64,000 nucleotides of DNA from Selaginella moellendorffii (lineage: Eukaryota; Plantae; Lycopodiophyta), in assembly GCF_000143415.4 (NCBI RefSeq), contig NW_003314398.1, forward strand, positions 124,001-188,000, given 5' to 3'. Positions within the stretch are counted from its first letter, which is position 1. Every line of letters starts with the position of its first letter. A program made the translations under genes and the position numbers. Below, piece by piece: positions 42,943 to 61,479 of the stretch. The notes under the pieces are model-generated. The model searched no databases. It saw only the letters and a program-made list of their open reading frames with translations, and had not been told where the DNA came from.

Positions 42943-43028
42943 GTTTTTTCCTCTAACGTAAGATGTCCTTACACGCAAAGCTCCTTACTATTTTTCCAAG
43001 ATATTTAGGGCTTGGAGCTCGCGAAGCT

Positions 43029-45080
43029 ATGGCGCCGGTCGATTCGTGCACGACGCCATTGCTCCAGGACGGCCAGACTACTGAAGCGCCGGTAAGTTCT
43101 TGGCTGGAATTTCTTTCTTGATCTGAGAGCGAGCGCTTGTTGTTGTGGAATCGTCAGCTCGAGGATCCCAAGCAGAGCTCCAGCTCGCGGCAGAACGTTT
43201 GCGAGGACGACGATGTCGATGGGACGTATTACACGGGCGATGGATCCGTGGATTCGTCCGGGCGCCGCTCGATCAGGGCCAAGACCGGCGGCTGGAAGGC
43301 CTGCCCTTTCATTCTAGGTGGAGATTGGCATACGTTGTGATCGCTTTCTCACTTTCTCGCAGGGAACGAATTTTGCGAGCGATTGGCGTACTATGGCATC
43401 AACACGAACCTGGTCGTGTATTTGACAACGGTGTTGCATCAAGGCAATGCCGCCGCTGCTAAATCCGTCACTGCTTGGTCTGGCACTTGCTACCTCACGA
43501 CCTTCATTGGTGCGTTTCTCGCGGATTCGTATTGGGGACGCTACTGGACCATAGGAATTCTCTCCATTTTCTATGCAATCGTAAGCAACTGTTCTTTGTT
43601 CTTTTCCTGGCTTCGTCTCTAACTTGTTTTGGTTCTCGCAGGGGATGATTCTTCTCACTCTGTCAGCCTCCTTGCCCTCGCTGAAACCGTCCGTTTGTCC
43701 TCTCGACAACACCCCCTGCGAGAGTGCCACTCCGGGGCAAATGGCGTTCTTCTACACCGCCCTGTACCTCATCGCTTTCGGGACCGGTGGCATCAAGCCC
43801 TGTGTGTCCTCTTTCGGAGCTGACCAGTTCGACACTGGAGATCCCACCGAGAGAGCACACATGACGTCGTTTTTCAACTGGTTCTACTTCTCCATCAACG
43901 TTGGAGCTCTTATCGCCAGCAGCGTGATCGTGTACATACAGGTGAACGTCGGATGGGGAATCGGATTCGCAATACCTGCAGTCACGATGCTGGTGGCCAT
44001 ATGCACTTTCTTCTTCGGGACGCCGCTGTATAGGAACCAAAAGCCCGGTGGAAGCTCACTCACTCGTATCGCCCAAGTCATAGTTGCTGCCAGCGCGAAG
44101 TCCCGAGTACAAGTCCCGGCGGACGAGCGGCTTCTGTACGAGGTGCCGGACAAGGAATCGGCCATCCAGGGAAGCAGGAAGATCGAACACACTGACGAGC
44201 TCACGTAAGATCTTTGCTAGTTTTGTTCGCTGATTAGTTTCGCTTTGAATCCACCAGGTGTTTGGACAAAGCAGCGACACAAACAGCTCCTGAGTTAGAA
44301 AACCGACCAAGTCCTTGGCGCTTATGCACAGTCACTCAGGTCGAGGAAGTAAAGATCTTTGTCCGGATGCTACCAATATGGGCGAGCACGATTGTCTTCT
44401 TCACGGTCTACTCGCAGATGTCCACCTTCTTCGTGGAGCAGGGCCAGAGAATGGATCCCAAACTGGGTCCAAAGTTTAACATCCCGGCAGCATCGCTCAC
44501 CGTCTTCGACACGCTCACCATCATCGTCTGCGTGCCACTCTACGACTGGTTCCTGGTGCCGCTGGTCCGAAAGTTCACGGGCCACCCGCAGGGATTCACC
44601 CAGATCCAGAGGATGGGAATCGGCCTCGTTCTCGCCACTGCTTCGATGCTGGTAGCGGCGGTGGTGGAAGTGAAGAGGCTCCAGCTCGCGGCCGAGTTTG
44701 ATCTCCTGGACAACGTCACGGATCCGGTCCCGATGAGCATTCTCTGGCAGATACCGCAGTACTTCCTCATCGGTGCCTCGGAAATTTTCACGGCCATTGG
44801 GCAGCTCGAGTTCTTCTACGATCAGGCACCCGACGCGATGAGGAGCTTGGCGAGCGCGCTGGCGCTCAGCACGACGGCGCTGGGGAACTACTTGAGCAGC
44901 TTCTTGGTGGCGGTGATCTCCGCAACGAGTTCTTCCGGGAGTTCCGGGTGGATCCCAAACAATCTAAATCGCGGCCACCTGGATTACTTCTTTTTGGTGG
45001 TGGCGGCGCTCAGCGCTCTCAATGGGCTCTTCTTCTGGGCATGCTCGAGAGGCTATCGATACAAGAAAGTTACCGTGTAA
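43029..45080 (+). CDS. NPF8: NPF8/PTR peptide transporter (5 exons)
   Basis: [71 protein letters not shown]. Confidence 0.95.
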
Positions 45081-47517: not shown

Positions 47518-47662
47518 CGAACAAGGAGCGAGCGAGGAGCGGCATCACTAGAAGATTAAAGAGTTATGGTACGTGCTTCAACAAGCGTCCAGCTTATTTC
47601 ATCGTTATCGTGCGAACGCTCCAGGGAGGAAGGATGGACAGGCCGGGGCTGGTTGAGGCTCG

Positions 47663-51901: not shown

Positions 51902-52031
51902 ATACGTGTGAGATTCGTAGGATAATCGTGTTTCCACTGGCATATTCGTAACGTAATGCTTTTAGGGCTTAGAGAAAGAATATTCACGGAATTTATAGAG
52001 CTTTCAAACTTTACAAGCTCGCGGATGCGTG

Positions 52032-53880
52032 CTAGCTGATCGCTGGAGGCATGTCCATGAGCGTCACTTCCGGGCTCTTGGAGAATTCATCGTCGCTGCT
52101 CAAGCCATCCTCGCTGACAGCATCGTCGGCCCTCTCGCGGAGCCACGGCTCGAGCGCTTCGTCCATGCGGCCGCCAAACACCGGCTTGATGTAGCCCTGG
52201 TCCAGCCACCGGAACACGGCGTGTGGGACGGAGCGAGGACCCCAGTCGTCTTCTTCGTGGGAGTACTTGAGCTCGTGGGCTTGCAAACTTGTCATCCTTG
52301 AGCTCGACGGGGGCGACGAGAGTCCCAGGAGTTTTAGCATCGGACCTGTGGAGCTCCCGAAGAGCAGGGTGGTGACGACGACGATGAACAAGGTGGTGGT
52401 CTCGATAGCGCGGTTCTTCGTCGGTATGTTCACGGCTAGAGCGTACGAGACGGCGCCACGGAGGCCGCACAGCCACATCATCGATTTCATGGGTGTTGTT
52501 ATCGGCCACCGCCTGGATCACAGCAAAGTTAAGCCATGGAAGACAAGTGATTGAGACGAGAGCTTTTACCGTCCTTTGTTTGCCAGCCATGAGAGTGGAA
52601 AGATGTTGATGGCCCTCGAGATTAGACACAGGGGGATCGCTGAGAGTATGAGTCCTGTGTCGAACTTGTGGTCGAGCAGCACAACTTGCATTCCCAAGTA
52701 TCCAAACACGAAGATCTCCGCCAGGAAAGATAGAGCCTCTAGCGCATACCTCGAGCCGATTTTCGATGCCTGTGACGAGTTGTAGTAGCCGTAGTGAGCG
52801 TTGCAGATGCCGCAGAAGAAAAGGGACATGATGCCGGAGAGTGACAGTAGTTCGCCGACGGCGTAGGCTACGTAAGCCGAGATGAGAATGAAGGCCAGCT
52901 CGAACTTGGCGTATTCACTCTTGGAGTCTATGAACTTCAGCACCAGTGCACACAACAGCGACACCACAAAGCCCAAAGCCGTCGAGGCAACGCTGATGAC
53001 ACAAAACTGCACTGTATCACAATGAAAGAGAGCACTGGTATCGTTGTACTTGCTAGAAGAAAATTGCGTGCTTACCTATGGCAACACCAATGGTCGAGAA
53101 AGTGAACTTTATATCCAGGAAAGACTCCTGTAAGCCAGTGCTCGTTAAGTAACAATGATAAAAAGAAAAAAGCTTACAAAAGTCCGGAAGAGAACTATCG
53201 CGCTAGCATCGTTGACAAGGCTCTCGCCTAGAACAAGGTTGTACAGCAATGTAGGAGCATGAACGTCTGGATTGAGAAGGATGTAAGCACCAATAGCAAA
53301 CTCATCGTAGTACCTTGGAATATGGACAGCGTTGCGACGGGATCAATCGCGGATATGAGAGCTCCAAACATTAGAGAGTCGAGCAATGGCGCTTCCTTAC
53401 TCAAGTGCCTGATGACACCGGCCAAGTAGAGGAAGTAAGTAAGGAGGCCATAAGCAAGAGCCGAGACAACCGTTCCAGCCACTGCGAAGAGCATGATCGT
53501 CGTGAAGTTGCGAAAAAAATCCTGAGAAGAAATCCAAGCAAAGTTCTTAGCGAGCTGGAGAATGCCAAGGGAGGCATACCTTTCGTTTGAGGGAGTAGCC
53601 AGCATTGAAAATAATAATTGGAAGTAGCCAGTAGAAGAAAGCCTGATTATCAAACGTGAGATTTCCGCCATCGAAGAAGAGCTTGGACAATCCTCCGAAT
53701 AGAATGCCGAGAATCATCGCGGCGGCTGGAAGGCAAACGATTCATGAGCTCTGGGAAGAAATTTCATTTCCACGAACCTGATTCCGTCAAGTAGATGAAC
53801 TGGTGCTTCTTCGCGAGGTACGCCACGAGCACGGCCACGATCATGAGCAGGCAGCAGAGGAGAATGTCTTCCATCGCCAT
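52032..53880 (-). CDS. NHX: Na+/H+ exchanger (CPA1/NHX family, multi-exon)
   Basis: FFYWLLPIIIFNAGYSL, FFRNF.TI.LFAV.GT, FGALISAIDPVATL, GESLVNDA, LSGIMSLFFCGI, W.CGLRGA. Confidence 0.9.
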
Positions 53881-53983
53881 GGCGAGCGAATTTGCGGGGA
53901 CCTCGAGCTGGACGCATTCCCTGTTCCAATATGCCCTAAATTTTCTAAAAAGATTTTAGGGCTCCTCCCCTCTTCTTCCTCTC

Positions 53984-54996
53984 ATGTTTGCAGCCAAGGC
54001 GCTCAAGAGGTCCGGCGACGTGCTGCGCCTCCATCTTCGCGCCGCGGCGCATCGATCGTTCTCGTCGGCAGCCGCGCCTTGTTCCGATAGTAAGGTTTAC
54101 AGCGATGCGAGCCGCGCATCGCGAGAGCTTTGGCTGAAATATTTCTTTGTTGCGCCTTGGCAGCAGCAGCCGCCGCCGCCGGATCAAATGCAAGCTCGAG
54201 AACTCTTCTCGGTGTTCTACGCGAGGCACAACAACAAGGTAAAGAAGAAGAAGAAATAATTCTCGAGAGAAAAAGCTTGTAAGAATTTCTTCCTCTGGTA
54301 GGAAGATTTCCATTCGCCTGTGGACTTCTCCATCCACTCCTACCGCCGAGAGAGGGCCGCCTTCTTCTCAACCATGACTCCAAGGGAGCGTCAAAAGATC
54401 ATGCTACAGGTACTTCAGTTCATCTCTCAAGTTTCTTTTCCAATCACAATTTCCAGAGCTTCGATCGTCCAAAGTTTGGGTTGCATCTCCCAACGAGGAG
54501 CTCGACAAGACAAGCTTCATGATCTCGTCATGGATAAGGAAGTTGTGGGTGCCGACGCTGGCCGTGTTGACAGTCATCCTGGGTTGGCAGTACCCGGTGA
54601 GCTTGGCCGTCAATCTGCTTCTCTTGGTCTGGAGCACAAAGCCAACTCCAGCGTCGATTCACATATGGCTTGAAGAGGTAGCTTCTTCCTTTTCTTCTCT
54701 TTCTCTTTTGACGTTTGATCGTTTGTTCTAGAGGCGAATGGAGGCAGCGATCCAGAAGCAAGGCCTAGACCGCTTCAAACACCAGGTAGAAAACTTGAAA
54801 GGAATACCTGAGCCTGACACTTGTGTGTGCTTGGCATTGGCAGCTCAACTTCTCGCTAGTCAAGCACATCCAGGTGGAAGACCATCTCCTCTTCTGCTTG
54901 GCCCGAGTGAGCGGCCTCACGGAGTCGATCGTGCTGCTTGGCTTTCTCGGCAACTGGTGGGTCTTGCACTCGTCCACGGTTTTCTTGAAATACTGA
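53984..54996 (+). CDS. Uncharacterised membrane protein with mitochondrial-type presequence (multi-exon)
   Basis: MFAAKALKR...RSFSS presequence; TM segment; STKP.P.SI; ED..LFCLARV...LGFLGNWW; GT-AG introns. Confidence 0.65.
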
Positions 54997-55089
54997 GCTC
55001 TGTACATACGCAAAGAGTCACTTGTTCTGGAAGCACGGTCTCGTAAGAGTTATCTCTGCTGCTGGAATGTTAGAACATCTGTGAACGGC

Positions 55090-56811
55090 TTACTCTCGCG
55101 TTTCCATTCTGGCAGTAACATTCTCCTTGGACACTCTCCCAGTGCTTTTAAGCATCGCAACAACAGCCTCGTGCACAGCCACATCGATCTCTACTCCACT
55201 CTCTGACGCTTCCCGGAGCAGCGTGACAGCGTCGTCGGCTCTCTCAGCCTTGCAAATCCCATCTAGCAGAGCCCCGTAAGTCGCCGCGTCTGGCCGGCAC
55301 TCCCGCTGTGGCATCTCCCTGAACAGCTCCAGAGCTCTTTCAACGCGGCCAACCCGGCAGAGCCCGGAGATGAGAGCGTTGTAAGTGACCGTCTGTGGCG
55401 ATACGTCTCCCCGGATCATGTCCGAGAACACCTCGTCGGCTTCCAGACCCCGGCCAGCCTTGCCAAGGCCATCGATGATCACCCAGTACGTAAGAAAGCT
55501 CGGCCTTGTGGATCCCGATAGCACCTGCTGGTAGAGCTCCATCGCTTCCCCGGCTCTCCCCTTCCTCAAAAGCCCATACAAGAGGAGCGTATACATGGTC
55601 GCCGTCGGCTTTGCTCGTTTGCCATCCTCGAGCTTCCCTCGATCTTCCACAAGCCTCGGTTTGGAATGCGATTCCACCAAGCTCCGGAACGTTCGAACAT
55701 CCGGCATTCTTCCCTTGGCCACCATCTTCTCCATGAACTTCCAAGCGTCATCCAGCCGCTGTGCGCTGCACAGCCCGTCCACGATCACGCTGTACGTGAC
55801 AAAATCGGGCTCGCACTTCTCGTTTCCAGTCATCTCCTCGAAACCTTTGAGAGCCTCGTCCAGACGACCCGCCTCACAGAACTTCCGAAGCACGTACGTG
55901 TGCGGCACCGCGTCGGGCTTGAAATGCTTCTCCTTCATCATCCTCAGGAGCTTCCACGCATCGCTCACCCGGCCACACCGGCACAGGATCTCCAGAGCAA
56001 CACCCAGGCACGGCATGTCGGGTATCTTGTCCTTGTCCACCATCTCCTGCGCGACTTTGGTGGCGTGATCCAAGCGCCCTTGCCTGCTGAGCTCGTAGAT
56101 CATGGTGCTATACGTCGACGAATCCGGCTGGCAAGTCTCTTGCATCATCTGGTAGTAAGAAAACGCATCGTCCAGCTTCCCAGATCGCAGGAGCCCGTTG
56201 AGCAGCACGCTGTAGATCGCCGTCTTGGCCTCGATGCCACCCCGTCCTTGCATCTCGTTGAAGACCTCGCATGCCTCGTCGATCCTCCCGGCGTCGCAGA
56301 GCCCCCGGACGAGCACCGTGTACGTGAAAGCATTGGGCTTGAACATCCGGCTGAAGCGCTGCTTGAAGATGCCATACGCGTCCATGGATCGGCCACACCG
56401 GACGAGCGTCTCCAGCAGCTGGTTGGCGGAGGTGATGTCGTGCTTGAATCCATCCTGCCTCGCGGCCCAGACGAAGAAGCTCACGGCCTGATCGGGCAGC
56501 ACGAGATGGCTCAGCACCAGGCACGCAATGCGTGTCGAGTCCCGGAGGTGTGAGACCAAGCGCTTGTCCAATCGCCCAGCCTTGACAGCGGCCACGATGG
56601 CCTCGGCATCCACCATCTCCGGCCGGATGGGATCCTTGGCCCAGTTGTATGCCGCCTTCTTCCCGCGAGCTTGGATCGCTCGATCCAGCCCTGCCACTGC
56701 GGTCTCCACGAGCTGGCTGCCGCAAAACGCGGCCAAGCAGCGAGCGCTGGAAAACCTGTATGCCTCCTCCCATCTCCATTTCCTGCCGAGAAAGAATGCC
56801 GCTACCGGCAT
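55090..56811 (-). CDS. P-class pentatricopeptide repeat protein
   Basis: About 11-12 tandem 35-aa motifs (TY..L..GLC..GR..EA...F.EM) after FF.WA..Q.GF.H. Confidence 0.95.
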   Translation of the reverse strand: MPVAAFFLGRKWRWEEAYRFSSARCLAAFCGSQLVETAVAGLDRAIQARGKKAAYNWAKDPIRPEMVDAEAIVAAVKAGRLDKRLVSHLRDSTRIACLVLSHLVLPDQAVSFFVWAARQDGFKHDITSANQLLETLVRCGRSMDAYGIFKQRFSRMFKPNAFTYTVLVRGLCDAGRIDEACEVFNEMQGRGGIEAKTAIYSVLLNGLLRSGKLDDAFSYYQMMQETCQPDSSTYSTMIYELSRQGRLDHATKVAQEMVDKDKIPDMPCLGVALEILCRCGRVSDAWKLLRMMKEKHFKPDAVPHTYVLRKFCEAGRLDEALKGFEEMTGNEKCEPDFVTYSVIVDGLCSAQRLDDAWKFMEKMVAKGRMPDVRTFRSLVESHSKPRLVEDRGKLEDGKRAKPTATMYTLLLYGLLRKGRAGEAMELYQQVLSGSTRPSFLTYWVIIDGLGKAGRGLEADEVFSDMIRGDVSPQTVTYNALISGLCRVGRVERALELFREMPQRECRPDAATYGALLDGICKAERADDAVTLLREASESGVEIDVAVHEAVVAMLKSTGRVSKENVTARMETRE

Positions 56812-56870
56812 TCTCCTCTTATTTCCTCCTTGCTACCTAGCTGAAGAACCCTAAAATCCCTGAAAGAGAT

Positions 56871-57443
56871 CTACCACGATGCCTTGTAGAGCCCCATGAG
56901 CTCGTGGCGCCCGGCCATCTCCCGCAAGCAGATTCGCGACATTCTAAACTTGCGGTAGACCGATCGAGACCTGCCCGTGATGATGCACCGGTTCCTCACC
57001 CGCGTGATGGAGCTGTTCTTGGGCAGCGCGTTGAGCTTGCTCTCGAAATATCGGCGGACCTCGAGCGGGAGATTGCGGTCGTGCGTCATCGCCTTGTACT
57101 GCATGCGCTCGTTCTCGTGCTCCGCGACGCACAGCCGGCGCTTGAAATCCCGGATCGCCTTGTTGTTCACCATGCGGCCGATGCGCTTGAGATAGACGGG
57201 GCTCCGCTGCGACAGAAAGATCGGTGGAAATTTCGCCGCATCCTTGGCAGATTCGGCAGCAGGGGCTGGAGAATCGCTAGCTGGAGAATCACTGGCTGGA
57301 GAAGAAGCTCCTGGAGCGGGCGCTTCTCCTTCTGCGGAGCGGATGCTCGAGCTTGTGAATGGCCGCGCCGACAAGAAGGATGATCTAAGACTGCCGCCGA
57401 GCAAGGACTGGTTCCATCGCGCGCTTCTCAGGAGGAATGCCAT
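56871..57443 (-). CDS. RPS14: Nuclear-encoded mitochondrial ribosomal protein S14 with presequence
   Basis: IRD.KRR...A..E..R..YKA, LPKNSS.TRVRNRCI.TGR.RSVY.KFR.SRI..RE.A, KASW; ~90-aa Ser/Arg/Ala-rich extension. Confidence 0.93.
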   Translation of the reverse strand: MAFLLRSARWNQSLLGGSLRSSFLSARPFTSSSIRSAEGEAPAPGASSPASDSPASDSPAPAAESAKDAAKFPPIFLSQRSPVYLKRIGRMVNNKAIRDFKRRLCVAEHENERMQYKAMTHDRNLPLEVRRYFESKLNALPKNSSITRVRNRCIITGRSRSVYRKFRMSRICLREMAGRHELMGLYKASW

Positions 57444-57484
57444 TGTCTCTTCCCTGTCAAGAACCCTAAATCAAAAGCAAATCG

Positions 57485-60400
57485 CTAGCGTCCATTCATG
57501 AATGTGTCCGTTTCATCGGACGGTACAGCTTCGGGTGTGGTGCTCTCTTCGGGGATCACCGAAAAGAGCAAGAAAAATGCGCCTGTGTAGATACTTACGT
57601 GCCAGAGACTGAAACCAACAACACCATCAACAGATCTACAAAGAAAAGCTAGCTTTTTTCTTCTTACCTGTGCCAAATCCAATAGTTCCTCGCTGTTTCC
57701 TGTTTCCAGCATACTCCCGCGAATGCTACGATCATAACTCCGATTCCAACATACGCCCAGACAAACCTTTGCCGGAGCTTCTTCACGAACGCGCTCCTTT
57801 GGAGCTCCAAGCTATACAACCTGGAAAAACCATGGAAGGTTTCACACGCGCTTTAGTTTCTTGATCACGGGAGTTTCTCCTTGCTCACCTTATCAACTGC
57901 AACCGAAAGGGCTCGCATCGACGCAGCCTGTTTTGCCCCCACAGCTCCCACAACAGCCCGAGCAGAAGCACCGCCGCGCCAATTCCAATCACAAGGAGTG
58001 CGCTCCTGACACTGAACACCAAAGCCAGTTAGTTCTTAAAGTTGCTCAAACTTTGCGTCCTCTGGCACACCTTGTCCGATCTTTGTTCTTGGCAATGATG
58101 GCGGTGATGACCGCCGCAGCTACATGAAGCGTTGGTTTGGTAAGGCCAAGAACTTCCGCCAGATACAAGCACGTAAAGATCACGGCCAGGAAAGAGAGCC
58201 AGAAATCCAGGAACTGCAAGGCGAAAAGTTAGGAACTGTGAGCACATTTTTAAGCTCTTGGCTTGCCTGCAATGTGTCGTAGGACAGAGCACACCAGCCA
58301 CCAGCGTCACAAGAGTGATAGATTGCACTAGAGATGCCGCTGGCCGTGTATATGAGCCACTCGGACATAGCCTATGTGACGAGCTTTTCAGCACAAAATA
58401 AATTCCTAAAGCAGATGTATCGAGCACCTTTTGACGAAGAGCCCAGAAGCTTGGAAAAGCAGCTGCTGCATTCGAGCCGACTAGAGCAGCAATCTGCAAG
58501 GATCTCGCTGAAACACACCGTTAAGATCGAAATTTATGTTGCCAAGCAAATGTAGACAAAATAGATGACAATTACCTGAAAGACTCAAGAGTTTCTCCGA
58601 GCAATCAATCCCACCGTGTGTCCGGTCGCAGTTGCAGAAGCTGTAGCCCAACATCCGGTTAATGCATCACAAGAAGAAGGATTCTACCTGTAAAAACTCA
58701 AGCGACTGGCTTCGTATCTTGTGGTGCAAGATCCATGGTGCGAGCAAGAATCCACGCAGCCATGTAGATGCACCCGGAACTTGAGAGCCGCTTCAACAGC
58801 TAGAGAATGTCTCACACCGATAGACCACAATCCTTCCGCGGGGTACGTGACGTCGAAGGAGAGAGATTTGTTGTTCTTGGATGTGTGGCGAAAGTCCCAG
58901 CTTTCAAGCGTGGGATATCCTTTAAACCGAGCATAGGCCTCTATCAAACTTGCCTCGGGAAAGTGAACCTCGAAAGACAAAACTGATCCAGCTGCACCAT
59001 TTGGAACTTCCAGATTCAGATATAACCACCTCAACGTAGTATTTACAGCCTGCGCGTTTAATAACTTCCAAGAAAACCAGCCAGACTTGGTGCTAGTCTT
59101 CGTCGCTGGTAAAAAGCTTGAATCGAAAGGTGACTCGCTCGCCCTTGAAACAACTCTCTGTGAAGAAGAACTAAGATTAGTTTTCGACCATAAGAAACAA
59201 AGCTACCTCAAGCGGGATGGATGGCGAATTGCATCCAGCTCCACCGTATCCGGCCACACAATCCTGGATTCTCCAGAGTAGAGAAAAACACGAGTTTGAA
59301 CCGCCTGTAGAATTGTCACCCGTCACACCTATGTACCACGCACCTTTCATAGGCGCCTCGATAACTAACTGAGTCTGATTGCCTGTAGAAACGTCACTAA
59401 GTTGAGGAAGAGCTTCATGTCTGGCAGCAAGCTTCATATCGGACACGGCAGCGTCAGTGTCGACCCTGATCTCCAAAGATGACACCAAGTCCGGAATTTG
59501 AAGAAGGAAAAATGTCCACTCACCCCGAGCAACACAGTTCCCCAACAGAGTTCTCCACGAAGAAGTGTTACCAGAAGCTTGCGATGTTCCATTGGCAATC
59601 CTCTCCACACCCGATACAGAAAACTCGCTGGAAGAGGAAGACGAGAGAACATTCACGCTCCGGTTACAGACCTCTCCTGCAAAATTGTCTTTGCAGACCG
59701 AAACTGCAACTTGCGCTTCAAAGTTATAAGTTGGTCCCCGTGAAATCTGTGAACAACGCAAGCAAGATATTGTAAACAAAAGAGAAAGACAAGCATTTAT
59801 ATGCTGACGCTTTTCTTACCATTGTAGACTGAGTCCGATGGGGACTTGGATCACTAAATGTTCCAATATATAATACTCCAGAAACTATCTGGAAACGTCA
59901 AAGAAACATTGTCAATGGAAGCGTAGACAGAGCGTAGAACATTACCTGTTCGTTCGTCATGTTGATGTGAACGGACTCTTGGAATAAAGCGCATTTCCCT
60001 GTCGTGGAAACATTGCGTCTCTCCCCGGCCATCTTAATCGCTACCTCGAGGCTTTCCACTGTACCAACGATAAAAAGAGAAATCTACCAAAAGCTCGAAT
60101 TGATCGCTTCCTTACCAGGCCCCGATGGCAGTGGAAGGCCGCCGAATTGGAAACAAACAAGAGGTCCACTCCCCTTTTCTTGCAAAGAGACAAGGAAAAG
60201 TGGAAACTTGGCACGAAGTTCTCGGAAAAAATGCAATTTTTTCTACCTGGGACGTCCATCTCTTCTTGGTGAGGATGATAGAGAGTACGGAGAAAGACAC
60301 AGGAATCTCGGCTGCAGGAGAGAGAGAGAAAAAGATGGAGAGAAAGCATTGCAAATGATCTTCGTACCTCGAAAGTAGTCCCAGCCCGAGGGCCCGATGG

Positions 60401-60593
60401 TCCTATCGGGATAAAAGGCCGACAATGCGATGCGCGAACTGGAATTCGAATTCGAACTGGAGCTCGCAAGAACCCTAAGAACTCCCACTCGATCAGAACT
60501 TCCAGGAGCGCCAGCGCTGATCGCCTCCGCCGCGATTCCATGCATCCCCAGAATGTAGCCGCCGGCTAGCAGCATCAACAATCGCAGCGCCAT
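57485..60593 (-). CDS. TMEM8/DUF3522 membrane protein with EGF-like repeats (multi-exon)
   Basis: Signal peptide, Cys-rich EGF motifs (CSHHGSC; CNCDRTHGGIDC), SNAAA.FP..WAL, EWLIYTASGISSAIYHSCD, YWIWHS|LWH. Confidence 0.88.
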
Positions 60594-60809
60594 GGCCTGG
60601 CGCCTCCTCTTTCTTGCCCAGTTGCCCTCTTCTTCCCACTCTCTTCTTTCTCCCGAGCGCACAAACGAGGAGGAAGCTCCCTTGCTCCGCCACGTGGCGC
60701 ACATCCGACGGTCCTCGGTCTACATTGGCGGCTCCATCCAATTTTGTCTAAGAGCGAGCCAATTTGGTACTGCTTAAGCTGTCTGTGAGAGAGAGCTTCC
60801 CTTCCTCCC

Positions 60810-61479
60810 ATGGATCGTTTCATTAGGGTTCTAGCATTCTCCCTGGCGGCATTCGCGATCGCCGGCTACTGCCGCGATCTTCCAGTCTCGAGCACGATCG
60901 CCAGCTTTCTCAGCACCAATGGCCTCCCTGCGGGATTGTTCCCGACGGCAGGGATCGAGGTGAGCAAAAGCGAAAATTTTCCAGAATTTCCCTCTCGCTC
61001 AATCGCCGGCTTTGCTGTAGAAATTCGAGGTGCGCACGAATGGCACTTTCCTGGTGGAGCTGCGCGATGTGTGCCAGTCCAAGGAGCTGGACGAGCAGGG
61101 CCTGTTCTTCGATTCTCGAATCAGCGGGAGCTTTGGCCACGGCAAGATGTACGACATGTACGGGGTGTGGATTAGGAAGAGCTTCCACTGGCTGCCAGTC
61201 TCGAGCGTGGAGCTCGCCGATGGCACTCACGTAAGCTTCCAGGTCGGGATGTTCGAGCACAAGCTCCCGATCACCAGGTTCCAGGACGAGATCGTCTGTG
61301 ACAAGCGCACCACCGGGAATTTCAAGCAAGAAAGCAACGACACTAGCTCCTTCGAGGTAAGCAAGAGCTAGAAAGATCACAAGAGCCAGAAAAATCGATC
61401 TTTGAGTCGCGAGTGTCTAACTTCCGCCTTGCAGGACTACGTCTATGGTGTCTTCCGGCGAGCCTTTGGTGGGATCTGA
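60810..61479 (+). CDS. DUF538 family secreted protein; exons ~60810-60959, 61021-61356, 61435-61479
   Basis: Signal peptide, L...GLP.GLFP, G.F.V.L...C, ISG....GK...L.GV; third exon inferred from GTAAGC donor, CTAAC branch point and GCAG acceptor. Confidence 0.8.

What the first reader, a model, noticed from the sequence alone, without database searches (positions are those of the whole stretch)
55090..60593. Operon-like run: TMEM8, rps14 and PPR separated by only 41 and 59 nt
Seen: three co-oriented genes with stop-to-ATG gaps at 57444-57484 and 56812-56870, each holding GAACCCTAAA (AACCCTAA at 57462 and 56847). Similar gaps occur at XXT to orphan ORF (42 nt, GAACCCTTAAA), 42943-43028 (86 nt, TTAGGGC) and NPF8 to FIGL1 (107 nt, TAGGGTTT). 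These are too short for a separate 3' UTR, promoter and leader. The two downstream genes are intronless and probably both organellar. Established: telo-boxes mark ribosomal-protein promoters, and polycistronic nuclear mRNAs occur in green algae. Inference: either polycistronic mRNAs or telo-box micro-promoters embedded in upstream CDS/UTR with overlapping transcripts; either would be an unusual expression system for a land plant.
Basis: partly seen in the sequence, partly recalled or inferred. Interest (0 to 1): 0.8.

Follow-up and report, generated by a model that had tools for sequence, protein, structure and literature searches.

The report
Tightly packed spikemoss genes, own promoters
Three same-strand genes of the spikemoss Selaginella moellendorffii really lie only 41 and 59 bases apart, but each tiny spacer carries a known plant promoter motif (the telo-box), and the RNA data fit separate, abutting or overlapping transcripts better than an operon.

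Summary
On the minus strand a 15-exon DUF3522/TMEM8 gene (stop at 57485), an intronless mitochondrial rps14 (uS14m, 57443-56871) and an intronless P-class PPR gene (56811-55090) are separated by 41 and 59 nt. Each spacer holds TTTAGGGTTCTT. The window is S. moellendorffii scaffold GL377702.1.

The motif is not chance. AACCCTAA occurs 8 times against 1.5 expected. TTAGGG/CCCTAA lies within 60 nt upstream of 5 of 9 annotated start codons, against 2.6% of random positions (P about 1e-6).

RNA contigs from four studies confirm the exon structure.
- In one run the rps14 contig ends at 57456, 13 nt before the ATG, directly joined to a sequencing adapter.
- Two runs show a coverage break inside spacer 1. 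Two others bridge it.
- Spacer 2 is covered in all runs, and so is the boundary to a convergent gene, where an operon is impossible.
- A bicistronic rps14-PPR RNA would carry 9 AUGs before the PPR AUG.

Best reading: separate transcription units with telo-box proximal promoters and abutting or overlapping ends. Polycistronic expression is unlikely but not excluded by contigs.

Telo-box enrichment next to start codons of S. moellendorffii mitochondrial ribosomal-protein genes is already published. This scan noted the same architecture seven times on other pieces of this genome.

The parts
57485..60704 (-). DUF3522/TMEM8-family gene of 15 exons. The annotated CDS is 60704..57485. The signal-peptide-like start is at 60593.
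   Evidence: Annotated 814-aa product with PF12036. 13 constitutive introns of 47-73 nt, and one alternative, are seen as joints in RNA contigs of 4 studies. Sequence of the 5' region is.
57444..57484 (-). Spacer 1, 41 nt, between the upstream stop codon and the rps14 ATG.
   Evidence: There is no contig coverage at 57457-57490 in run X1 or at 57471-57489 in X7. X3 and X4 bridge it.
57461..57470 (-). Telo-box 1. It reads TTTAGGGTTC on the sense strand and ends 17 nt before the rps14 ATG.
   Evidence: The variants of run X3 at 57471 and 57473 lie beside it, not in it.
57456..57456 (-). Candidate rps14 mRNA 5' end, 13 nt before the ATG.
   Evidence: The X1 contig 56868-57456 runs straight into the Illumina read-1 read-through adapter (table 7). 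In X7 the rps14 contig reaches 57470.
56871..57443 (-). Intronless nuclear gene for mitochondrial ribosomal protein uS14m (190 aa), with a presequence-like extension of about 90 aa.
   Evidence: Pfam Ribosomal_S14, 9.4e-25, at aa 136-189. Best PDB relatives are uS14m 9evs_M (9.6e-25) and Arabidopsis 6xyw_Bm (1.1e-21), against chloroplast S14 at 2.4e-7.
56812..56870 (-). Spacer 2, 59 nt, between the rps14 stop and the PPR ATG. It is transcribed in all four runs.
   Evidence: It forms a haplotype bubble (56807, 56823, 56843, 56867) with both alleles present in RNA contigs.
56846..56855 (-). Telo-box 2. It reads TTTAGGGTTC on the sense strand and ends 34 nt before the PPR ATG.
   Evidence: None of the four allelic SNPs falls in it.
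55090..56811 (-). Intronless P-class pentatricopeptide-repeat gene (573 aa).
   Evidence: Pfam PPR_1/PPR_2/PPR, E down to 2.4e-88. No joints in the RNA contigs. Only generic PPR matches in the PDB.
60823..60830 (-). Telo-box in the opposite orientation (AACCCTAA on the gene's sense strand), 119 nt before ATG 60704 and 230 nt before ATG 60593. It may belong to the promoter of the upstream gene.
60468..60478 (-). Third copy of TTAGGGTTCTT, inside exon 1 of the upstream gene and downstream of both candidate ATGs. Its role is unknown.
54997..55089 (.). Convergent spacer of 93 nt between the PPR stop and the stop of the + strand gene 53984..54996. RNA contigs bridge it.
   Evidence: annotation. In one search, the contigs that cover the PPR run on for 391-426 nt below 54850 in X1, X4 and X7.

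Best explanation
These are three ordinary, separately initiated nuclear genes in the very compact genome of Selaginella moellendorffii. Each downstream gene has a minimal proximal promoter built around a telomere-repeat-like telo-box (TTTAGGGTT on the sense strand), placed 17-34 nt before its ATG. Transcription starts at or just after the motif, which gives leaders of about 13-30 nt. The upstream gene's 3' end is formed within the same few dozen bases or runs on into the next gene, so neighbouring mRNAs abut or overlap.

Shown: the gene structures, the spacers, the motif and its non-random position before start codons, and transcription of the whole stretch with correct splicing.
Suggested but not proven: a 5' end at 57456-57470 and a coverage break in spacer 1.
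Inferred: that the motif recruits a telo-box factor (TRB-type Myb proteins, as known from Arabidopsis) and drives initiation, and where the poly(A) sites lie.
For: 1. The window is GL377702.1 of S. moellendorffii, and the deposited annotation calls the same CDSs.
2. The motif is enriched and positioned. AACCCTAA occurs 8 times against 1.48 expected. Its core lies within 60 nt upstream of 5 of 9 annotated ATGs, P = 1.4e-6. It sits 8-43 nt before the ATGs of unrelated genes: rps14, PPR, the 238-aa gene, NHX, tetraspanin, FIGL1 and the ORFs at 43029 and 16190.
3., spacer 1: in X1 the rps14 contig ends at 57456 fused to the read-1 adapter, and the upstream gene's contig begins at 57491 fused to the other adapter, with no coverage between them. 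In X7 the contigs end at 57470 and begin at 57490.
4., contig bridging: contigs also bridge the convergent PPR/238-aa-gene boundary, so bridging here means overlapping ends, not polycistrony.
5. No spliced-leader-like loose end is present at the rps14 5' end.
6. Translation logic: the upstream ORF is 814 aa. An rps14-PPR RNA has 9 AUGs before the PPR AUG, and the first is in a strong A(-3)/G(+4) context.
7. Published: telo-boxes are enriched close to the start codon of mitochondrial and cytosolic ribosomal-protein genes in S. moellendorffii (PMC3212954).
Against: The RNA evidence consists of assembled contigs, which cannot establish starts, ends, strand or abundance of molecules.
- Two of four runs (X3, X4) give a spliced contig that runs from the upstream gene through spacer 1 into rps14. 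All four cover spacer 2 without a break. Molecules spanning two ORFs may therefore exist.
- The contig end at 57490/57491 lies 3-4 nt before the upstream gene's stop codon, so it cannot be the main poly(A) site. The real 3' end is unknown.
- No TSS evidence was obtained for the PPR gene.
- Binding of any factor to the motif is untested.
- The sparing of the motif by allelic variants is not statistically significant (about P = 0.3).
Confidence: 0.75

Rival explanations
1. True polycistronic expression. One capped, polyadenylated mRNA carries two or three of the ORFs (TMEM8-rps14-PPR or rps14-PPR), and the downstream ORFs are translated from it, as in green-algal polycistronic loci.
For: The spacers are 41 and 59 nt and the genes are co-oriented. 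A spliced contig spans the upstream gene's last exons, rps14 and the PPR in X4, and the upstream gene plus rps14 in X3. Spacer 2 is covered in all four runs.
Against: - An adapter-tagged 5' end at 57456 and a coverage break in spacer 1 are seen in X1 and X7.
- Contigs also bridge a convergent boundary, so bridging is uninformative.
- The upstream ORFs are long (814 and 190 aa), with 9 AUGs before the PPR AUG and a strong first AUG. This rules out leaky scanning and makes reinitiation improbable.
- Each downstream gene has its own positioned promoter motif, which also precedes non-tandem genes.
- No paper reporting nuclear polycistrons in Selaginella was found.
Confidence: 0.07
2. Boundary-element reading. 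The genes are monocistronic, but the telo-box with its bound Myb-type factor does double duty. It halts or terminates polymerase coming from the upstream gene (a roadblock) and nucleates initiation of the next gene. That would be what makes 40-60-nt spacers workable.
For: In the three shortest tandem spacers the motif begins 13-15 nt after the upstream stop codon. The coverage trough in X1 and X7 is centred on the motif. One telo-like motif lies in a purely convergent 3'-3' spacer at 51962.
Against: The 13-15-nt spacing follows trivially from the short gaps. Only one of three convergent spacers has the motif, which chance can explain. X3 and X4 read through the motif. There are no binding or termination data.
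Confidence: 0.15
3. Annotation artefact. The start codons or gene models are wrong, so the real spacers are longer, or the ORFs are exons of one gene.
For: The upstream gene's start is ambiguous: 60704 in the annotation, 60593 by the signal peptide.
Against: - 57443 is the first ATG after the observed RNA 5' ends and opens a presequence plus a full uS14m domain.
- 56811 opens a 573-aa PPR ORF with no joints.
- The upstream stop follows a confirmed last intron.
- Stop codons separate the three frames.
- An independent annotation agrees.
Confidence: 0.03

Closest known systems
Telo-box proximal promoter element of plant ribosomal-protein and translation-apparatus genes (AAACCCTAA, bound by TRB-type Myb proteins), including nuclear-transferred mitochondrial ribosomal-protein genes (PMC3212954)
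   Same: The sequence is a telomere-repeat-derived motif. It sits close to the translation start. It lies in front of a transferred mitochondrial ribosomal-protein gene. The published enrichment was shown in the same species.
   Different: - Only the short form AACCCTAA(A) is present, not the 9-mer AAACCCTAA.
- Seven of eight motif-ATG pairs in this window have the G-rich strand on the gene's sense strand.
- The motif also precedes non-ribosomal genes (PPR, FIGL1, Na/H exchanger).
- The whole promoter plus leader must fit into 41-59 nt that begin at the neighbour's stop codon.
Overlapping transcription in compacted eukaryotic genomes (microsporidia, nucleomorphs); recalled from my own knowledge, not checked in a paper here
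   Same: The intergenic spacers are too short for a separate UTR and promoter. RNA covers gene boundaries, including convergent ones.
   Different: This is a free-living vascular plant with about 100 Mb of DNA, normal splicing and a recognisable promoter motif in each spacer. The extent of overlap per molecule was not measured here.
Polycistronic nuclear mRNAs of green algae, and the 'polycistrons'/read-through transcripts reported from long-read data in cotton (PMC6797763)
   Same: Co-oriented ORFs with short inter-ORF distances, and RNA that spans more than one ORF.
   Different: Here there are signs of an internal 5' end, long upstream ORFs with many AUGs, and a promoter motif before each ORF. 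In cotton too, the component genes had their own TSS and TES signals.
Rice/maize rps14 expressed from within the sdh2 (SDHB) gene by alternative splicing; recalled from my own knowledge, not checked here
   Same: A transferred mitochondrial rps14 that depends on the immediate neighbourhood of another nuclear gene.
   Different: No splicing joins rps14 to its neighbour here (no joints in 54850-57608). It has its own presequence and start codon.

Membership tests
Telo-box promoter element | Sequence match to the telomere-repeat-derived motif (AAACCCTAA; short form AACCCTA) | tested here: met
   AACCCTAAA is at 57462-57470 and 56847-55. The full 9-mer AAACCCTAA is not present at these two sites, so only the short form is met.
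Telo-box promoter element | Non-random position close to the TSS or start codon of the regulated gene | tested here: met
   The motif ends 17 and 34 nt before the two ATGs. Five of 9 annotated starts have the core within 60 nt, against 2.6% at random, P = 1.4e-6. The published position in this species agrees.
Telo-box promoter element | Association with ribosomal-protein or translation genes, including transferred mitochondrial ones | tested here: met
   rps14 is uS14m. Other carriers in the window are not translation genes, so the association is not exclusive.
Telo-box promoter element | Bound by TRB/Pur-alpha-type factors and needed for expression | not testable with these tools
   Needs ChIP, DAP-seq or reporter mutagenesis.
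Polycistronic nuclear mRNA (green-algal type) | Single capped, polyadenylated molecules that span two or more ORFs | tested here: inconclusive
   Contigs bridge the spacers in X3 and X4 and bridge spacer 2 in all runs. A contig across two genes does not show a single transcript, and a convergent boundary is bridged too.
Polycistronic nuclear mRNA (green-algal type) | No internal transcription start before the downstream ORF | tested here: not met
   For rps14: an adapter-fused RNA end at 57456 in X1 and contig ends at 57470/57490 in X7. This is suggestive only, because it rests on contigs. It was not tested for the PPR.
Polycistronic nuclear mRNA (green-algal type) | An upstream ORF that lets ribosomes reach the next AUG (short, few AUGs, weak start context) | tested here: not met
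   The upstream ORFs are 814 and 190 aa. Nine AUGs precede the PPR AUG, and the rps14 AUG has A at -3 and G at +4.
Spliced-leader trans-spliced operons | A common leader sequence joined to the 5' end of downstream cistrons | tested here: not met
   The only loose letters at the rps14 5' end are Illumina adapter, and no other loose ends lie in the spacers (table 7).
Overlapping transcription units of compact genomes | Transcripts of neighbouring genes share sequence (a UTR inside the neighbour) | tested here: inconclusive
   There is continuous RNA k-mer coverage over spacer 2, over spacer 1 in two runs, and over the convergent 93-nt spacer. Molecule ends were not resolved.

The most novel reading that the evidence does not exclude
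In S. moellendorffii the telo-box with its bound Myb-type factor may be a bifunctional gene boundary. It would stop or terminate polymerase arriving from the upstream gene and at the same time nucleate initiation 5-30 nt further on. That would let a vascular plant run 'stop - telo-box - ATG' junctions of 30-60 nt genome-wide. A further possibility is a directional form of the motif, with the G-strand on the sense strand.
Probability: 0.15. Interest if true: 0.6.

Novelty: new member of a known kind. Interest (0 to 1): 0.3.

Why it matters
This locus is a clean example of how far a land-plant nuclear genome can compress the signals between genes. A 41-nt spacer appears to hold the end of one mRNA, a promoter motif and the whole leader of the next. 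If the pattern holds genome-wide, as the scan's other notes suggest, S. moellendorffii would be a natural system for defining a minimal plant promoter and terminator, and for asking how read-through is tolerated. It would also be useful for compact synthetic plant gene cassettes. The locus also shows how a mitochondrial gene that moved to the nucleus (rps14) is wired into the telo-box regulon. It does not show a new expression mechanism.

Tried and rejected
- Synteny in other lycophytes. The word-based protein search with rps14 found one relative, a 112-aa protein at 55% identity. It sits on a GC-rich, alga-like contig with no PPR neighbour and no telo-box context, so no conservation test of the arrangement was possible.
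- A wider annotated gene map. Exact-protein look-ups for four other single ORFs of the window found nothing, so the start-codon statistics rest on the 9 annotated genes of 45-64 kb.
- A functional link between rps14 and the PPR, for example a mitoribosomal rPPR. The PDB search gave only generic PPR matches, with designer PPRs and PPR10 ahead of the rPPRs. No link is shown.
- Canonical poly(A) hexamers. None lies near the upstream gene's end. AAATAAG lies 7-13 nt before the PPR ATG and could serve rps14, but that is too weak to use.
- Motif conservation between alleles and strains. All five variants in the two spacers miss the motif, but the chance of that is about 0.3, so it is not evidence.
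- Contig depths. PPR > rps14 > upstream gene in three runs, but they are per-contig means, and the PPR contig runs into a convergent gene, so I did not rely on them.
- Literature. Searches found no paper on nuclear polycistrons, micro-spacers or overlapping mRNAs in Selaginella. The genome paper could not be fetched under the PMC id I recalled for it.
Full report
**What is there**

The window is part of Selaginella moellendorffii scaffold GL377702.1. The exact rps14 and PPR proteins are encoded there, and the scaffold position equals the window position plus 124,000.

Four co-oriented genes lie on the minus strand:
- A PPR gene of 889 aa that ends at 60910.
- A DUF3522/TMEM8-family gene. The annotated CDS is 60704..57485, and a signal-peptide-like start lies at 60593.
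- rps14 at 57443..56871.
- A 573-aa P-class PPR gene at 56811..55090.

Each contains TTTAGGGTTCTT on the sense strand, which is GAACCCTAAA on the + strand at 57461 and 56846.

**The genes are real and correctly delimited**

RNA-derived contigs from four studies were laid on 54850-60800.
- They show 13 constitutive introns and one alternative intron of 47-73 nt in the upstream gene. All have GT..AG ends on the minus strand except one, which is GC..AG.
- They show no joint anywhere in rps14 or the PPR gene. The runs therefore contain RNA, and both downstream genes are intronless.

The rps14 product has a Ribosomal_S14 domain at residues 136-189.
- Its best solved relatives are plant mitoribosomal uS14m: 9evs_M at 9.6e-25 and Arabidopsis 6xyw_Bm at 1.1e-21. 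Chloroplast S14 reaches only 2.4e-7.
- It has an N-terminal extension of about 90 residues, rich in Arg and Ser.
- The mtDNA of this species has no ribosomal-protein genes (PMC5654404). This is therefore the nuclear copy of a transferred mitochondrial gene.

The PPR gives only generic repeat matches. I found no functional tie to rps14.

**The motif is not chance, and it marks starts in general**

AACCCTAA occurs 8 times in 64 kb against 1.48 expected, and no shuffle out of 100 reaches 8.

Within 45-64 kb, where an independent annotation is available, a TTAGGG/CCCTAA core lies within 60 nt upstream of 5 of 9 annotated start codons. The figure for random positions is 2.6%, giving a binomial P of 1.4e-6. 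A sixth gene, FIGL1, has the variant TAGGGTTT 8 nt before its ATG.

The carriers are unrelated genes: uS14m, the PPR, a 238-aa protein, a Na/H exchanger, a tetraspanin and FIGL1. In this genome stretch the motif therefore behaves as a general proximal promoter or leader element, not as a signal between the genes of an operon.

In seven of eight motif-ATG pairs the G-rich strand is on the gene's sense strand. The divergent pair at 53880/53984 has one copy facing each way.

**Polycistron or separate units**

Spacer 1:
- In run X1 the rps14 contig ends at 57456, 13 nt before the ATG. It is fused to the start of the Illumina read-1 read-through adapter.
- In the same run the upstream gene's contig starts at 57491, fused to the end of the other adapter. 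Nothing covers the bases in between.
- Adapter junctions enter an assembly only when several fragments share that end. That is what an RNA end produces. This step is my inference from how such libraries are built.
- In run X7, from another study, the contigs end at 57470 and begin at 57490.
- In X3 and X4 a spliced contig runs through the spacer, so some molecules cross it.

Spacer 2: it is a four-SNP haplotype bubble, and both alleles are present in RNA in three of the four runs (X4 shows only the reference allele). It is transcribed throughout in all four.

Contig bridging carries little weight here. The contigs that cover the PPR gene also run 391-426 nt beyond 54850. That takes them across the 93-nt spacer into a convergent gene on the other strand, where a polycistron is impossible. 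Bridging in this genome therefore reflects overlapping or abutting ends.

No spliced-leader-like sequence is attached to the rps14 5' end.

Translation also argues against a functional polycistron. The first ORF is 814 aa. An rps14-PPR RNA carries 9 AUGs before the PPR AUG, and the first of them sits in a strong A(-3)/G(+4) context.

**Limits**

Contigs cannot establish ends, strands or levels.
- The 57490/57491 end lies just before the upstream gene's stop codon. It cannot be its main poly(A) site, and the true 3' ends of the upstream gene and of rps14 remain unknown.
- I have no start-site evidence for the PPR gene.
- Allelic and strain variants in both spacers miss the motif, but that is not significant (about 0.3 by chance).
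- Conservation in other lycophytes could not be tested.

**Comparison with what is known**

Telo-boxes are a published promoter feature of cytosolic and transferred mitochondrial ribosomal-protein genes. They lie close to the start codon, and the enrichment was shown in S. moellendorffii itself (PMC3212954).

Long-read 'polycistrons' reported in cotton also had TSS and TES signals for each component gene (PMC6797763).

I found no paper describing nuclear polycistrons or micro-spacers in Selaginella.

Cap-selected TSS maps of this species exist (PMC10557634) and would settle the question.

The scan itself has noted the same 'stop - telo-box - ATG' architecture seven times on other pieces of this genome. 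One follow-up reached the same verdict. I treat those notes as leads, not as support.

**Verdict**

The polycistron reading is unlikely (about 0.07). The micro-promoter reading with abutting or overlapping transcripts is the best explanation (about 0.75). A more interesting variant, in which the telo-box also acts as a transcriptional boundary, is possible but unsupported (about 0.15).

This is a further, well-documented instance of a known promoter type in an unusually compact plant genome. Interest is modest.

Noticed in passing
window 53930-53965: The divergent pair of the 238-aa gene (+, ATG 53984) and the Na/H exchanger (-, ATG 53880) has its ATGs 103 nt apart. Between them two telo-like motifs form an inverted repeat (GCCCTAAA ... 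TTTTAGGGC), one facing each gene. This resembles the palindromic double telo-boxes noted elsewhere in this genome.
   Followed up: partly
window 60468-60478: A third exact copy of TTAGGGTTCTT lies inside exon 1 of the TMEM8-like gene, about 115 nt after the signal-peptide ATG and on the same strand as the two spacer copies. All three copies of this 11-mer in the 64-kb window are in this one locus. It could be an internal start, or chance.
   Followed up: no
window 60593-60704: The deposited annotation starts the TMEM8-like gene at ATG 60704. That adds 37 residues before a typical signal peptide, which starts at ATG 60593. The shorter model looks more plausible.
   Followed up: partly
window 54997-55089, 51902-52031, 47518-47662: Three convergent gene pairs have only 93, 130 and 145 nt between their stop codons. 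RNA contigs run across the first one, so antisense overlap of 3' ends is likely. The 130-nt spacer also holds a telo-like TTTTAGGGCTT at 51962, although no gene starts there.
   Followed up: partly
window 59465-59522 and 58214-58266: In the TMEM8-like gene an extra 58-nt intron is spliced out only in some contigs of runs X3 and X4 (alternative splicing or intron retention). One constitutive intron has GC..AG ends instead of GT..AG.
   Followed up: no
window 56807-56867: There are four heterozygous SNPs within 61 nt around spacer 2. One changes codon 2 of the PPR (Pro to Gln). No heterozygous site was seen in the 2.3 kb of rps14 and PPR coding sequence in the same run, so the spacers evolve fast apart from the motif.
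   Followed up: partly
L002 (Logan contig of SRR23012404), 491-829: The only database relative found for the Selaginella uS14m by the word search is a 112-aa uS14m-like protein on a GC-rich contig that looks like green-algal nuclear DNA or RNA. Other lycophyte orthologues were absent from the collection.
   Followed up: no
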